Positions 44,521-63,410 of a DNA stretch of 64,000 nucleotides are shown piece by piece. The position numbers were made by a program, and so were the translations under genes. The notes under the pieces are model-generated. The model saw only the letters and a list, made by a program, of their open reading frames with translations. It ran no database searches and was not told the origin of the DNA. Source of the DNA: Sminthopsis crassicaudata (taxonomy: Eukaryota); the NCBI RefSeq assembly GCF_048593235.1, contig NC_133622.1, positions 182,342,001 through 182,406,000 on the forward strand, written 5' to 3'. How positions within the stretch are numbered: the first letter of the stretch is position 1; the number at the start of each line of letters is the position of its first letter.

Positions 44521-45743
44521 TTTTTTATTAAAGCTTTTTATTTTCATAACATATCCTTGGATAATTTTTCAACACTGACCTTTGCAAAACCTTGTGTTCC
44601 AATTTCCTCCCTTCTCCTTACCCCCTCCCTTAGATGGCAAATAATCTAATATATGCTAAACATAATAAAAATATATGTTGAATCTAATAAATGCATACAT
44701 ATTCATACAATTATCTTGCTGCACAAGAAAAATCAGATCAAAAAGGAAAAAAATTAGAAACAAAATAACATGCAAGCAAACAACAACAAAAAGGTGAAAA
44801 TCCTATGTTGTAATCTACACTCAGTTCCCACATCCTTCTCTCTGAGTGTAGATGGCTTTCTTCATCACAAGATCACTGGAACTGGTCTGAATCATTCTCA
44901 TTGTTGAAGAGATCCACATCCATCAGAATTTACCATAACAAATTCAGCCCTTCTTCAACTGATGGGCAGTTTATTGTCACTACAAAACGTATTTCCAGAA
45001 ACATTTTTTGTACATATGGATCCCTTTCCTTCCTTTAAGATTTCTTTGGGATATAAATCCAATAGAAACATTGCTGGATCAATTATGCACATTTTGATAG
45101 CCCTTTGGACACAGTTCCAAATTACTCTCCAGAATGACTGGATCAGTTCACAACTCCACCAACAATGTATCAGTGTCCCAGTTTTCCCACATCACCTCCA
45201 ACATTCGTCATTGTCTTTTCCTGTCATCTTAGCCAATCTGAGAGGTGTATAATGGTACTTCAGAGTTGTCTTGATTTGTATTTCTCTGATCAATAGTGAT
45301 TTAGAGCACCTTTTCATATGATTAGAAATGGTTTCAAGTTCTTCATCTGAAAATTGTCTGTTCATATATTTTGACCATTTATCAGTTGGAGAATGGCTTA
45401 AATTTTTATAAATTTGAGTCAATTCTCTATATGTTTTAGAAATAAAGACTTTATCAGAATTGTTGAATGTAAAAATGTTTTCCCAGTTTATTGCTTCCCT
45501 TCTAACCTTGCCTATGTTAGTTTTGTTTGTGCAAAACCTTTTTAACTTAATATAATCAAAATTATCTATTTTGTGTTCAATAATGAACTCCAATTATTCT
45601 TTGGCCACAAATTCCTTTCTTCTCCACAAATCTGAGAGGCAAATTATTCTTTGTTTTTCTAATTTGCTTATAATATCATTCTTTATGTCTACATCATGAT
45701 CTTATTTCTATCTTGATATACAGTGTTAGGTGTGGGTCAGTGA
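44521..45743 (-). mobile_element. 5'-truncated, internally deleted marsupial L1 with ORF2 remnant
   Basis: ORF 45192-45593 (DNFDYIKLKRFCTNK...DKWSKYMNRQFS...HMKRCSKSLLIREIQIKTTLKYHYTPLRLAKM) is L1 ORF2; exact TSD atatggcttc at 44511-44520 and 45744-45753. Confidence 0.95.
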
Positions 45744-55768: not shown

Positions 55769-56789
55769 CACTAGTGGTAATTATAGTAATAGGAGGAGGA
55801 GGAAGAGGAGGAGTAGCAATGTCAGTTGCAGCGATAGCTAATACTTATAGAGTGCCTACTGTGTGCCAAGCACTATACTAAGTAGTTTACAGATATTAGG
55901 TCAGTTAATCCTAATAACCATCTGGGAGATGGGTGCTATTATTACCCTCATTTTATAGATGAGGAAACTGAAGGAAACAAAGGTTAAATGACTGGCACCA
56001 GGTCTAAGTAAACTGTCTGAGCTGAATTTGAACTCATGTTCTTTACTCCAGATCCACTATCTACTTTAATCTTTAGCTGTCTCACATATAAACATAGAAA
56101 GACAAGGATTTACTGTTTTAACCTTGGGGGCAATCTTTCAGTCTGTATCGACATTATGGCAATACTCCAGAGTAAAAGTAAAAATTCATCAAACTTTTTT
56201 TGAAGGAATGCAGTGGGAATGGTGTATGTGTAAAGGAAAGAGAGCCTTGGGATTCCTAGTTGTGTGAATTGGGACAAGCCCGTTCATCTTTTTCTGAGTT
56301 TCAATTTTGTCATCCATAAAAGGTGTGTTTGGAGGGAATCCATATTCTATTTATGGGGATGTTATATGAAAAGTGTTTTATAAACTTAAAGAATTTTAGA
56401 ATTATGAATAATTTTTATTATTTTCACTATGATGTGCTCATCAGACAGATGACTGCAAAGAGATGAATTCTTTGGCCTTAAAACTCATGGAAATGACTAC
56501 TAAGGCATGGAGGGGTCATTATCTCTTTTGATGAATGGAACACTCTTTTGGGGAAATTTTGGACTTTGAAATGTTGAAGTGCTAAATGTGAATTGAAAAT
56601 GTGAGTTGTGCTAACTGGGAGTTAAAAAAGGTTAGAAGAGATATGAATGGTCTCTCTATGGCTGTTACTCATCATAAGGACCAGCTTTACTCTTGCCCAT
56701 CCTCTCTAGTAGTAGCAACAGAGCTTCCAGATTGACCTATGCATTAATGTGTTGATCAGGGCATCCATAATCAATTGAGTCTCCAATCT

Positions 56790-57859: not shown

Positions 57860-58199
57860 TGAGTAGATACTTTCTAGTAAAGAACCTGTGTCCTTTCTCA
57901 GTGACTCATAGTTACAGGCAGGAAAGCCCCAGCTGCCCATCTTGCTGCCCCTTGGCCAGGCTATCCTGTTGTGTAACTAACCCAGTTTCAAACCTCCTCA
58001 GGGAGATTGCTGTAACATACTTTCCTCAGGCAGCTGTTCTCTGGGCTAATTAGGTCATGCTGTAAGGACGCATGCTCAGGTATTTAACCCAAATTTACCC
58101 TTGTTTCTACATCCTCTGTGTCAGACCAAGTGTTAGACCAAGCAATTCTTTCCTTTCCTCGAAGTTACACTCTTTTGAGGTTGCTTCCCTCCTTTACAG
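57860..58199 (+). promoter_or_regulatory. Putative promoter/enhancer upstream of exon A
   Basis: Unique sequence with AP-1 TGACTCA (57902), two CAGCTG E-boxes, TAATTA, AGGTCA half-site and TATA-like TATTTAA (58081). Confidence 0.35.
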
Positions 58200-58202
58200 G
58201 GA

Positions 58203-58245
58203 ATGGAGAAAATGGAGACAAATGAATTACTGCCAAGGGTTTTTG
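58203..58245 (+). CDS. Putative coding part of exon A (58200-58245): MEKMETNELLPRVF(phase 1)
   Basis: Acceptor ttgcttccctcctttacag|G, good Kozak ggaATGg, donor TTG|gtaggt, paralogous to exon B, in frame with exon C. Confidence 0.5.
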
Positions 58246-58651
58246 GTAGGTCCAACTGTCAAAATTGCCAAAATTTATATATAGATGAGTGTCTTAGAAG
58301 GGTCAAAGAAAGAAACTCAAGTACTCAACATGCAGAAGAGCTCAGGCAGGATCCTGATTTAGAGTCAGAGACCCTAGAACATAGAACTTTAGAGCTGGAA
58401 AGGACCTTAGAATGTAGAATGTCAGATCCTCAACCATAGAATACCAAAGCATGAAGACATCTTAGGACAAAAAATGTTAAAGCAGGAAATGACTTTAAAG
58501 ATTTTTTCCCCTCAATTCCTTATTTTATTTTACTTTTTTAGTTGTACATAAGTGATGGGAACTCCCATTGAGGAAACCGCCTCTCTACCAATACCGATTG
58601 ATATGATCTCTGTAACTCAGAGTTTCAGAAAATTGTCAAGGTTACATAGCT

Positions 58652-58827
58652 CAGGGCTTCACAAACTTTGTCCACTTTACGATCCCTTTTCACCCAAGAA
58701 ATTTTTATGTGACCCCAGGTATATAGGTATATTAAATAATTATACAAGTCAAACATTCATTAGTAACAAATCATAATTCATAACCCCCCATGTTCACCTA
58801 TGTGATGCCCCAGTTTAAGAAGCTTTG
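58652..58827. mobile_element. hAT (Charlie-type) MITE
   Basis: TIRs cagggcttcacaaact ... agtttaagaagctttg; degenerate TA-centred TSD acatagct/atgtagtc. Confidence 0.7.
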
Positions 58828-58859
58828 ATGTAGTCTAACCACATTTTATTTTTACTTTG

Positions 58860-58977
58860 TTGTGGGGAGGCAATTGGGTTACACAACTAGTGTTAAGTGT
58901 CTGAGGTCGCATTTGAACTCAGGTCCTTCTGACTTCAAGACCCGTGCTCCATCCACTGTGCCATCTAGTTGTCCCTA
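58860..58977 (-). mobile_element. WSINE1-like SINE
   Basis: gaggcaattgggtt...gttaagtgtctgaggtcgcatttgaactcaggtccttctgacttcaagacccgtgctccatccactgtgccatctagttgtccc. Confidence 0.85.
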
Positions 58978-60239
58978 ACCTCCTCATTTTAGAAACAAGT
59001 AAGTTAATTGACTCAGAGAAATAAAATTTCCTACCAAAAGTTGCACAAATAGGTAAGTGGCAAAGGTAAGATGGGAACTCTGTTCTTCTGATTCCAAATC
59101 CAATATTTTCACTCTACTTCTCACTTTGCCTTCTTGTCCCTGGCTGCTGACGCTGAAGCTCTTTCCACTGCATCCTGATTTCTAATAAATATTTGTTGAT
59201 ATGCTCTAAGCCTCCATCTGCCACTTATATATGGCATTGTGCAAAGGGGCCTAAGCAAACACAATGCCTGTCCTCTAGGGCCTTCTAATCTAAGCCTGTC
59301 AAATCTGTTAAACTACCCAGAGGAGCCATTCTTCACACAGCCAGCATTTCAGAAAATAAAGAATTTTAGAAATGTTGTCCTATATGAGCCCAGAGCCAGA
59401 GCTTGTCGAATCCAAAAGCTTCATCATTTTATTTTTTTTAGAATGCCAGTTCTTTGCTCTTCCAAAGCCTGATTTCCCTTGCCTCCAGCCTGGCCATTTT
59501 AAAAGCTCTTGCCTGGTGGGGGGCATATGGCCCTGGATCCCCCAGGTGTTTCACTTGAAGCTGGACTCAGAGGTTTTTGCAATGGTCTCATCCTGTCCCT
59601 TCCAGCCAAAACCTGAAAATTTGAACCCTTCCTCACCTAAAAAGTAGAAAAGGGGTAAATATCCACAGCAGTGAAGCAACTAAATAGCAAAACCCTTGCC
59701 AGTTTGGCTTGGCTTGGAGGCCATTGTTGAATTCCTCTTCAAATCCTTTACTATATCTTTTGCAACAGATGGTCATATGTATACTGGAATTATTTTTATG
59801 ATCATCTGTTTGCTCACTCTGTGTTGAGGGGAGCATGTGTCTCAAAACAAACGGTGATCCACTTGGTATATGGTGAGGGCAAGTAGACTGTTATATTCAC
59901 AACTAGAACTTACTGGTAAGAAGTGAAATAAAAGGGATCACCAGTTAATTTGTGATCAAAAAGAGAGACAAAGTAGTCACTACCAGGGGCCAGGATCATG
60001 AGTGGGCAGCTCTAGTACACAAAATATTAAAATAGACAGAGGAAAGTAGCATCTCTGGGGGATCTTTGGTAGGATAGGGACAAGGATCTCTCTGGATTCT
60101 GAGATCAGTAGAATGGGGGAATGAAGAAGGGTCATAGGAGATCCGAGAGGAAATGAAGTAGCAGCATGAAATGGGTCAAAGTCATCTAAAGGCTGATCCA
60201 GAAACAAGAGACATGTCATTTGGAAAGCTCTATGGAGAA

Positions 60240-60465
60240 TGGACAGTGGGTAGAATTCCAGGCTGGAGTCAGTTAAATTATAAAGTCAGATCCAGACTCA
60301 GATATTAATTGTGTGATTCTGGGTAAGTCACTTCACCCCATTTGCCTTAGTTTCCTCACCTGTAAAATGAGCTGGAGAAGGAAATGGCAAAACCACTTCA
60401 GTATCTTTGCCAAGAAAACCCAAAGATGGGGTCATGAAGAATCAGACGTGACTGAAGAAGAGAGG
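60240..60465 (+). mobile_element. MAR1-like SINE
   Basis: gggtaagtcacttcacc...aaaatgagctggagaaggaaatggcaaaaccacttcagtatctttgccaagaaaacc...catgaagaatcagacgtgactgaa. Confidence 0.9.
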
Positions 60466-60799
60466 AAAGATCAAGTGAGAAGCTTCAAGGGGCAGACAGA
60501 AGCTCCTGATTGGAGAGGATGGAGATTTGAGTTTAACAAAGGGTTGGAAACAATTTGCTTTGATAGGCATTTTGTGAGTGGGAGGCAGGCAGTGAAGGGA
60601 TGCTGATAAATGTTTAACAACAATGTTTTCTGGGAGGAAATATATGCAGGTCATGCTTTTAAATTTAATCTGCATTATCACCATTTTCTTTGTTAGCATT
60701 TTCATTATTACCATTACTTTTTTTGGCCCATAATCAGCACAACAATAAATCAAGCGTGATTTGTAGTGTTTGTTGATTTCAAAGGTGTAAATATTCACA

Positions 60800-61124
60800 T
60801 ATTTAACAGTTTAAGCTGACTCCAGCATGCCCTACATCATGGATGGGCTGTGTTTTTCTGTGTGAACCCTGATCGGCTTCCCGGTTTATTCTAGATAATT
60901 TTCTGCTGGACAGTATCCATCACTTCTCCCACCCCCCAGTGATAGGATCACCATTAGGGGACAGAGCCCTCTTTAATCAGGGATAGACATCTGACTTGTC
61001 TAAGGGCATTATCTCTGTCCTCTGGGCTCACACTTGCTATTAGATGCAGCTGGGACTTTGGTGTCTGAAGTGCTTGGCCAATGACATGAAGGATGGCCAT
61101 GTCTTACCTCCCCTTTTTATGCAG
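60800..61124 (+). promoter_or_regulatory. Putative promoter region upstream of exon B
   Basis: Unique GC-richer sequence with GATA-like sites, a CAGCTG E-box and CCAAT (61078). Confidence 0.3.
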
Positions 61125-61172
61125 GGATGTGCAGCTGACAATAAGGACATTTGCCTTCATGAAAAATAGACC

Positions 61173-61239
61173 ATGTTGATGGATGGTAAAGAAGACCCTG
61201 TGCACTTAGAGAAAAATGGACTACTGCCAAGGGTTTTTG
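61173..61239 (+). CDS. Putative coding part of exon B (61125-61239): MLMDGKEDPVHLEKNGLLPRVF(phase 1)
   Basis: Acceptor cctcccctttttatgcag|G, in-frame TAG then accATG, the same donor TTG|gtaggt as exon A, in frame with exon C. Confidence 0.5.
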
Positions 61240-61655
61240 GTAGGTCCAACTGTCAAACTTGTTGAGATTGGAGCACATATGCAGCAAGCTAGTAGGGTAG
61301 CTGGAGTGGGTTTTCGCCAGCTGTAACAGTCTTCATCTGAGCAGGTCACTAAAGCTCTAAGAATCAGGACCATGACACTGATGACTGGATTCTAGCCACC
61401 TCCATCACTTTGCTCAGGCAGAGCTAAACCCTTTTGGTTTTCATGTTGGGGATATTTGAAGGTTCATATTATCTAGATTATTCCCTGGGTATGGTGCTCA
61501 GTTGTATAAGTTAATTTTTTCCTTTGGAATCTCTTCATTTAGATCTGGGACCAAAATGTCACATTTAGTAGTCTTTATGTTCCCAGAGAAGTTTAAACTT
61601 GTTAGTAAAGATCTGTACTGCTGACCACCTGTAATCTTTGATTTCTGCTCCCCAG

Positions 61656-61711
61656 AGGAAGAGAAAGTAAGATTGCCAAATAGGCTGAATGCCTTAACAT
61701 CGTACGCTTCG
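61656..61711 (+). CDS. Putative exon C: (E)EEK to the donor at 61667, or (E)EEKVRLPNRLNALTSYAS to the donor at 61712
   Basis: Branch-point-like ctgac at 61621, AG-free tract ending tttctgctccccag, two phase-0 donors (gtaaga, gtaatg) 45 nt apart with no stop between them, three CpGs retained. Confidence 0.5.
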
Positions 61712-63410
61712 GTAATGGACACTTGAAAAGTACTCGATTTTCCTTCAAGGTTCAAATAGAATCTTTTCCTGATGCAATCCATGAGGCAATAAGCTTTTAT
61801 ATATGTGAGATATTATGTGTTGCTACCATCTTTGCCTTCATAATCTTATATTTTAATAGAGACATGCAGCAGTGCAAATGGTTATGTATGTGGGAGAGGA
61901 CTGGGGAGTGAAGAGTGGGAGGACCGGGAACATCCTCTTGCAAAAAGTGAAATGATGAGATCCCAGCATTTTTGACTGACATTCACTTTCTAATTTATAC
62001 TCCGATGGCGTATTCTGCCTTGTGTTACAGATTTCCTTATGTGTCTTATCTCCCCTCCACAATAGCTCTTTAAGGCAGGACCAATATTATCTTTCATCGA
62101 TGTATGTTCCAAGGTTCAGGATAGTGCATGGGATTGTGTAGAATAATAATGTGACTTTGCTGGGAGACTTTTAGATTTACAAAGTGCCTTTCATTGAAGT
62201 TTGTATTTTATCCTGTTGATCACACTGTGAACCATAGCATGAAGCTGTTATTGCTCCCATCTTACAGAAAAGGAAACTGAGGCACAGTAGAGAAAAGAGC
62301 AACTGGTCTTTAAGTCAGAGACGCTGAATTCAAATCATGAGACTTTAATATCTTTTAGTTAGTCTGCTTTTGACTTTGGACTTCTCCCATATGGACACCA
62401 TTCCCTATTCCCACCCCCTCAATTTCAGTTATCGTTTGTGCTGTGTATATGAAGTAGATATATGAAATACATTTAGGAGAGCATAATGGTTCGATTTGCA
62501 TGAAGAAATCATGTCACGCTTTTTACAGATTACAAAGATTTGTTATTTATTATGTGACTAAGATGTCACTAAGTGAAGCCAAATCATAGGTAATTAAGCA
62601 ACTTGCTTCTGTGTTTGGGAACCTTTAAAGTCTCAGGGGATAGGAAGAACTGGAGCAGTTTAGACAGGAAAGGAGTGTGGGAGGAGGTAGGGAGAAATCA
62701 AGGAAGAGCCAGGAGTCTACATGATTGGCCAGGTTCCAGACTTGTCTAAAGATATGCTAATCAAGTCTCAGAGGGTGGAGATTGGATGGATAGATTAGAG
62801 CTACTAACCATGAAAGTCTATGAGATGATTTAGAATTCCAGCTTCCTATCATATATTAACAAGACAATCTGGTAAAACTTTCCTGGCAAGGGGAGCAGAA
62901 CGGGCTGGTTTAGAGTTCACATCATTTTGTGTGTTGTCTTCTGTTATTAGATTGTAAGCTACTTGAAGGCAAGGACTGTATTTTTATTTGTATATAAATC
63001 TCCAGTGTTTAAACAAAGTGCCTGACTCTTAAAAGGGGTTTAGTAGATATTTATGAACTATGATTATAACTATCTATGGGATTTTGGGGAAGATACCTCT
63101 CTCTGAGACTTATCAATAAAATGAAATTAAGTTAGATGATTCAATGTAATTCATAAATCATTTATTAAGTATGTACTACATACAAGACAACAGTATTAAA
63201 TACCAGGGATACAAAGATATGAAAGCAATGTAATCCTTTTAATTTATTTCCCCCACTGACTCTGAGAGAGAAACTAATATTACATTAATAATTACATTGT
63301 AATCCAACACTTTTCCTTCATTTATTGTAAAGGCCCATATCTGTTTAAGATTAGTCAGTCTTTGAAGGGCAGGACTGATTGATGAGCTTGCTCCTAGCCC
63401 TTAAGAAATA

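What the first reader, a model, noticed from the sequence alone, without database searches (positions are those of the whole stretch)
58200..61261. Two paralogous exons 2994 bp apart sharing an identical donor block: duplicated alternative N-terminal exons of an unrecognised gene
Seen: tactgccaagggtttttggtaggtccaactgtcaaa (36 bp) is identical at 58228-58263 and 61222-61257, and 45/48 match over 58220-58267 vs 61214-61261. The block matches no repeat I recognise and straddles a TTG|gtaggt donor. Each copy also has a pyrimidine-tract acceptor followed by GGA (58200, 61125). Both exons are 1 mod 3 in length (46 and 115 nt). They encode EK-MET-NELLPRVF vs EK---NGLLPRVF, a clean 9-nt in-frame indel plus a synonymous TTA/CTA Leu change. 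The wider flanks are unrelated. Inference: an exon duplication giving alternative or mutually exclusive N-termini. The 18 identical intronic bases suggest gene conversion or a conserved splicing-regulatory/pairing element.
Basis: partly seen in the sequence, partly recalled or inferred. Interest (0 to 1): 0.8.

Follow-up and report, generated by a model that had tools for sequence, protein, structure and literature searches.

The report
Duplicated exon-like block, expression untested
Two short stretches 3 kb apart in this marsupial genome share a near-identical 53-letter block that sits on a good splice-donor signal, and each has a very strong splice-acceptor signal upstream, so they look like a duplicated pair of alternative exons, but I could not get RNA evidence or name the gene.

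Summary
The repeat is real. It is an ungapped 53-nt direct repeat, 49/53 identical, at 58215-58267 and 61209-61261. Its exact 36-nt core runs from -18 to +18 around a TTG|GTAGGT donor. There are only two copies in the window, and both lie in otherwise unique, unalignable sequence.

The ungapped alignment reads ETNELLPRVF against EKNGLLPRVF.

Outside the repeat, the acceptors at 58200 and 61125 rank among the 8 best plus-strand AG sites in 64 kb. A random point has such an acceptor 20-130 nt upstream with probability 0.014. This is the main support that both copies are exons.

Splicing both copies together stops translation after 18 codons, so alternative use is the coherent reading.

Protein searches found nothing real, so the gene is unnamed and coding status is open. 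Copy 2 has two tiny upstream ORFs, and another frame has an ATG inside the block. No docking-site complementarity or significant RNA structure was found.

Best reading, at about 0.45: a tandem exon duplication giving two alternative 5' exons, which is a known kind. The main rival is a short copied patch with no function.

The parts
58215..58267 (+). Repeat copy 1: 53 nt, made of 31 exon-side nt and 22 intron-side nt
   Evidence: 49/53 identical to 61209-61261, ungapped, blastn E about 1e-16 within the window
61209..61261 (+). Repeat copy 2: 53 nt
58200..58245 (+). Candidate exon A, 46 nt. ATG at 58203 in context GGAATGG. Reads MEKMETNELLPRVF plus 1 nt. Predicted only.
   Evidence: acceptor at the 99.88th percentile of + strand AG sites, donor at the 97th percentile of GT sites
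61125..61239 (+). Candidate exon B, 115 nt. ATG at 61173 in context ACCATG, with an in-frame TAG at 61167-61169. Reads MLMDGKEDPVHLEKNGLLPRVF plus 1 nt. Two tiny uORFs start at 61127 and 61159. Predicted only.
   Evidence: acceptor at the 99.81st percentile, same donor as exon A
58246..58267 (+). Shared intron-side segment of copy 1 (GTAGGTCCAACTGTCAAA..): first 18 nt identical, 21/22 overall
61240..61261 (+). Shared intron-side segment of copy 2
58178..58199 (+). Pyrimidine tract and CAG acceptor of candidate exon A
61103..61124 (+). Pyrimidine tract and CAG acceptor of candidate exon B
61656..61711 (+). Unverified.
   Evidence: acceptor at the 99.2nd percentile; donors at 61667 (98th percentile) and 61712 (87th percentile); 4 CpG within 35 nt

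Best explanation
This is a tandem exon duplication. Two paralogous internal exons lie near the 5' end of one plus-strand transcript, at 58200-58245 and 61125-61239. Each is entered through its own strong acceptor and left through the same TTG|GTAGGT donor. They are used as alternatives. Each carries its own AUG, and both read into the shared ..LLPRVF end in phase 1. Splicing A to B gives a stop after 18 codons, so a productive mRNA can hold only one of them. The exact 36-nt core centred on the donor is kept by selection on donor-region signals or by short-tract gene conversion between the two copies. Shown: the repeat, the signals and the frames. Inferred: that either exon is spliced, that the ORFs are translated, the identity of the downstream partner, and the cause of the identical core.
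For: The repeat is real, unique in the window and sharply bounded. The acceptors at 58200 and 61125 lie outside the repeat and are among the 8 strongest plus-strand AG sites in 64 kb. The probability that a random point has one 20-130 nt upstream is 0.014, so about 2e-4 for both copies if independent. The shared donor is at the 97th percentile of GT sites. Both copies have an ATG-started ORF in the same frame with reasonable Kozak contexts, and A+B joined gives MEKMETNELLPRVFGMCS-stop. All 4 mismatches lie outside the central 36 nt, with P about 0.03 if they were spread evenly. The surrounding 58000-58340 and 60900-61900 match no other part of the window, so neither copy sits in a recognisable dispersed repeat. 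Run-level hints that the locus is transcribed: declared RNA runs of a related species hold 10-14% of the exact words of 58100-61800, and several runs hold words of exon B. Tandem exon duplications, including unannotated ones and ones in UTRs, are common in animal genes (PMC9013439).
Against: There is no junction or strand evidence at all. Pseudo-exons are common: 26 plus-strand and 22 minus-strand acceptor-donor pairs pass looser thresholds in this window. No protein anywhere matched either N-terminus. These blanks are weak, because a control ORF of this genome is not on record either and full-length proteins fall outside the length limits of the word-indexed searches. Homology covers only the 3' 31 nt of each exon, and the exon lengths differ (46 and 115 nt). 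The differences are 2 non-synonymous to 1 synonymous, and the intron part is at least as conserved as the exon part, which is not the pattern of protein-level selection. Copy 2 has two uORFs ahead of its ATG.
Confidence: 0.45

Rival explanations
1. A short copied patch with no function of its own. About 53 nt was copied 3 kb away by short-tract non-allelic gene conversion or templated repair and has drifted neutrally since. At most one copy is a real exon, and the other is a pseudo-exon that happens to lie behind a pyrimidine-rich AG.
For: The edges are sharp and no homology is detectable beyond 53 nt. The 4/53 divergence is in the range expected for neutral DNA of moderate age. The intron side is as conserved as the exon side, and the exon-side changes are mostly non-synonymous. 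Pseudo-exons are frequent. No protein match was found.
Against: A top-0.2% acceptor upstream of the recipient copy has a chance of only about 0.014. The mismatches avoid the central 36 nt (P about 0.03). Both copies keep an ATG-started ORF in one frame.
Confidence: 0.3
2. Both copies are real spliced exons but non-coding. They would be alternative 5'-UTR or lncRNA exons, and the ORFs are incidental.
For: Copy 2 has two uORFs and an in-frame stop. A second frame has a conserved ATG inside the block, giving M[N/D]YCQGFL in phase 0 (contexts). There are no protein homologues. Duplicated exons are especially frequent in UTRs (PMC9013439).
Against: Nothing excludes it. The same-frame ATGs with good contexts (GGAATGG, ACCATG) and the 1-mod-3 lengths fit coding slightly better.
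Confidence: 0.15
3. Both copies are fragments of one interspersed repeat family, or of another multi-copy element, and the splice-like signals are incidental.
For: Marsupial SINE/MIR-like copies lie between the two blocks.
Against: There are only two copies in 64 kb at up to 3 mismatches. The flanks are unique and share nothing. The 24-nt core has no hit in the metagenome or viral contig collections, though those hold almost no marsupial DNA. There is no Rfam or tRNA match.
Confidence: 0.05

Closest known systems
Tandemly duplicated alternative (mutually exclusive) exons, as surveyed in PMC9013439, PMC9741552 and PMC8373072
   Same: Two neighbouring homologous exon-like units lie in one orientation, each with its own acceptor and donor. 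Both lengths are 1 mod 3, so joint inclusion breaks the frame.
   Different: Homology covers only the 3' 31 nt of each exon plus 22 intron nt. The lengths differ (46 and 115 nt). Each unit carries its own start codon instead of swapping an internal protein segment. Expression and mutual exclusivity are untested, and the gene is unknown.
Competing RNA structures made by duplicating exon-adjacent intron sequence (selector/docking model; PMC6071210; ATE1 in PMC7797038)
   Same: A near-identical intron segment follows both variant exons, as the duplication model predicts for selector sequences.
   Different: No complementary docking site scored above shuffled controls anywhere in 50-64 kb. The local hairpin that covers the donor is not significant (z about -1).
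Arrays of alternative first exons with their own promoters (UGT1A type, described in PMC9013439)
   Same: Homologous variable 5' exons give different N-termini joined to common downstream exons.
   Different: Both units here have strong acceptors, so they look like internal exons fed from an upstream exon rather than promoter-driven first exons. The units are very short and there is no CpG island.

Membership tests
Tandem duplicated alternative exons | Significant sequence homology between two neighbouring exons of one gene, in the same orientation | tested here: met
   53 nt, 49/53, spacing 2994, 0 expected by chance. It covers only part of each candidate exon.
Tandem duplicated alternative exons | Each copy is bounded by a usable acceptor and donor | tested here: inconclusive
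   Prediction only: acceptors at the 99.8th percentile and the donor at the 97th percentile with rough matrices. No splicing was observed.
Tandem duplicated alternative exons | Both copies are found in mature RNA, joined to common flanking exons | not testable with these tools
The two run searches give presence only.
Tandem duplicated alternative exons | Same reading phase, so that either exon keeps the frame and both together do not | tested here: met
   46 and 115 nt, both 1 mod 3. A+B joined stops after 18 codons.
Tandem duplicated alternative exons | Equal or nearly equal exon length and homologous peptides over the whole exon | tested here: not met
   46 against 115 nt. The peptide similarity is limited to the last 10 residues.
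RNA-structure-controlled mutually exclusive exons | One docking site complementary to the selector next to each variant exon | tested here: not met
   The best duplex energies are no better than those of shuffled queries.
Interspersed repeat fragment | Many dispersed copies, with homology extending into the flanks | tested here: inconclusive
   Two copies in 64 kb with unique flanks. The genome-wide count was not possible.
Alternative first exons with own promoters | Each variable exon starts at a promoter and has no acceptor | tested here: not met
   Both units have top-ranking acceptors. There is no CpG island. The only promoter-like hint is a mild excess of GATA/CACCC/CCAAT motifs upstream of copy 2.

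The most novel reading that the evidence does not exclude
The exact 36-nt core centred on the donor (-18 to +18) is a selected splice-control element shared by two paralogous start-codon exons of an unannotated marsupial gene. It could act as a hairpin that hides the 5' splice site, or as one binding site for a regulator, so that the two N-termini are chosen by one switch.
Probability: 0.1. Interest if true: 0.5.

Novelty: new member of a known kind. Interest (0 to 1): 0.3.

Why it matters
If both units are spliced, this is an unannotated duplicated 5' exon pair in a marsupial gene. It would add two alternative N-termini or leader sequences and a small example of donor-region conservation after exon duplication. 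That is useful for annotation but is an ordinary kind of event, because tandem exon duplications are frequent in animal genes. If it is a neutral patch, it has no importance.

Tried and rejected
- **Read laying.** So there are no junctions, strand or depth.
- **Whole-library protein search.** phmmer of the 30-aa copy-2 ORF against 1.84 billion representatives returned only three long repetitive proteins with spurious summed scores.
- **Word-indexed protein searches.** The copy-1 ORF (residues 1-40) and a hypothetical spliced copy-2 peptide found no candidates. The PDB search was also blank.
- **Exact look-ups of window ORFs.** None were on record, including a control ORF. The collection does not hold unannotated ORFs of this genome, so the blanks say little.
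- **Collection scans.** The 24-nt core had no hit in the metagenome or viral contigs.
- **RNA families.** Rfam and tRNA scans found nothing.
- **Docking-site search.** Nothing scored above shuffles.
- **Folding.** Folds of both copies were not significant, and the minimum-energy structures differ between the copies.
- **Wider homology at the same offset.** Only a 22/30 match at offset 2970 turned up, and it ties with the best of 1600 offsets.
- **Literature search for the peptide.** No papers hold it.
- **Earlier scan notes.** A search by sequence was blank.
- **Not attempted.** I considered padding the query with an unrelated long protein to widen the length range of the protein search. I dropped it as unreliable.

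Full report
**1. The observation**

The window is AT-rich at 26-41% G+C, has no CpG island, and holds marsupial SINE/MIR and L1 fragments. Earlier notes of the scan call the genome a marsupial.

It has no third copy in the window at up to 3 mismatches, and none is expected by chance. A 22-nt core gives the same result.

The full homology is an ungapped 53 nt at 58215-58267 and 61209-61261, 49/53 identical, with spacing 2994. Nothing else aligns. This was checked three ways:
- local alignment of 700-nt flanks;
- blastn with word size 7 of 58000-58700 and 60900-61900 against the whole window;
- blastn of the three intervals before, between and after the copies.

One 22/30 match at offset 2970 (56376 against 59346) ties with the best of 1600 offsets. 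It is not significant.

Both copies lie in sequence that is otherwise unique in the window.

**2. Anatomy**

The block straddles TTG|GTAGGT, with 31 nt on the exon side and 22 nt on the intron side. The four differences are at -27, -21, -19 and +19. The exact core therefore runs from -18 to +18. A mismatch-free run that long has P about 0.03 if the four differences fell at random.

The ungapped alignment reads ETNELLPRVF against EKNGLLPRVF. The gapped version gains about one match, and only because copy 1 has an internal near-repeat.

Upstream and outside the block, CAG|GGA acceptors with long pyrimidine tracts put the exon starts at 58200 and 61125. With a rough position matrix they are at the 99.88th and 99.81st percentile of all plus-strand AG sites. 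That places them among the 8 best in 64 kb. Only 1.4% of random points have such a site 20-130 nt upstream. The shared donor is at the 97th percentile of GT sites.

This is the strongest argument that both copies are exons. Either two independent strong acceptors arose by chance, at about 2e-4, or the acceptors descend from the duplication and were kept while everything around them decayed.

The caveats are real. The matrices are approximate. At looser thresholds the window holds 26 plus-strand and 22 minus-strand acceptor-donor pairs, so pseudo-exons are plentiful.

**3. Reading frames**

- **Candidate exon A (46 nt).** It starts GGA ATG G and reads MEKMETNELLPRVF plus one base.
- **Candidate exon B (115 nt).** It has an in-frame TAG, then ACC ATG, and reads MLMDGKEDPVHLEKNGLLPRVF plus one base. 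It also has two tiny upstream ORFs starting at 61127 and 61159.
- **A second frame.** It has an ATG inside the block in both copies (58222 and 61216), giving M[N/D]YCQGFL in phase 0. There, one of the three exon-side differences would lie before the ATG, one would be conservative and one synonymous.
- **Joined products.** A spliced to B stops after 18 codons.

That points to constraint or copying at the nucleotide level, not the protein level.

**4. RNA evidence**

The two run searches show that four runs of one study of the same species hold 33-53% of the sampled words of 58100-61800. Four runs of that study hold all 8 words of exon B. Declared RNA runs of a second organism label hold 10-14% overall and 3 of 8 words of exon B. 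I infer that the second label is a related species.

I read this as a sign that the locus is transcribed in several data sets. It gives no strand and no junction, and the listed runs are a selected subset.

The decisive test was therefore not done.

**5. Gene identity**

- phmmer of the copy-2 ORF against 1.84 billion representatives gave only three repetitive proteins with spurious scores.
- Word-indexed searches with the copy-1 ORF and with a hypothetical spliced copy-2 peptide found no candidate.
- PDB was blank.
- The peptide is in no held paper.
- A control ORF of this window is not on record either, and full-length proteins fall outside the length limits of the word-indexed searches.

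These blanks do not exclude an annotated isoform.

**6. Mechanism checks**

The intron-side segment has no complementary partner in 50-64 kb better than shuffled queries. This gives no support for a selector/docking mechanism.

The 36-mer alone can form an 8-bp hairpin that covers the donor, at -9 kcal/mol. Its z-score is only about -1, and the two copies fold differently in context.

There is no Rfam family or tRNA.

**7. Comparison with what is known**

Tandem exon duplications are common in animal genes, also in UTRs, and many are unannotated (PMC9013439). Duplication of exon-adjacent intron sequence has been proposed as a source of competing structures (PMC6071210).

This case fits that kind in orientation, splice signals and phase. 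It departs from it in three ways:
- the homology is only partial;
- the exon lengths are unequal;
- each unit carries its own start codon.

It does not fit promoter-driven first-exon arrays, because both units have strong acceptors.

**8. Verdict**

The exon-pair reading is plausible and has statistical support from the acceptors, but expression, coding status, conservation and genome-wide copy number are all untested.

My weights are:
- paralogous alternative 5' exons, coding status open: about 0.45;
- a neutral copied patch with at most one real exon: about 0.3;
- explicitly non-coding exons: about 0.15;
- a repeat fragment: about 0.05.

Even if true, it is a new member of a known kind, so interest is modest.

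Noticed in passing
Its acceptor is at the 99.2nd percentile and it has donors at 61667 and 61712. It carries 4 CpG within 35 nt, one of the denser CpG spots in a CpG-poor window.
   Followed up: partly
window 60893-61082: Upstream of copy 2 there are three GATA-type motifs (60893, 60940, 61009), a CCACCC box (60929) and a CCAAT box (61078) within about 230 nt. The window average is 0.9 GATA motifs per 275 nt, and there are none upstream of copy 1. This could hint at a promoter or enhancer, or it could be chance.
   Followed up: partly
window 56376-56401 and 59347-59371: A weak collinear match, 22/30 at offset 2970, lies close to the 2994 spacing of the repeat. It could be a remnant of a larger old duplication, but it ties with the best of 1600 offsets and is not significant.
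   Followed up: yes
window 60360-60451, minus strand: A strong acceptor-donor pair (scores 9.0 and 8.7) lies inside a MIR-like SINE copy. It looks like a typical repeat-derived pseudo-exon or exonisation candidate. The same spot (60339-60375) tripped the read-laying filter.
   Followed up: no
window 45192-45593, minus strand: A 133-aa ORF with the look of an L1 ORF2 fragment. I identified it by eye only.
   Followed up: no
window 58228-58249: The shared core can fold into an 8-bp hairpin (CUGCCAAG / UUUGGUAG) that covers the donor from -4 to +4. It is not significant against shuffles.
   Followed up: yes
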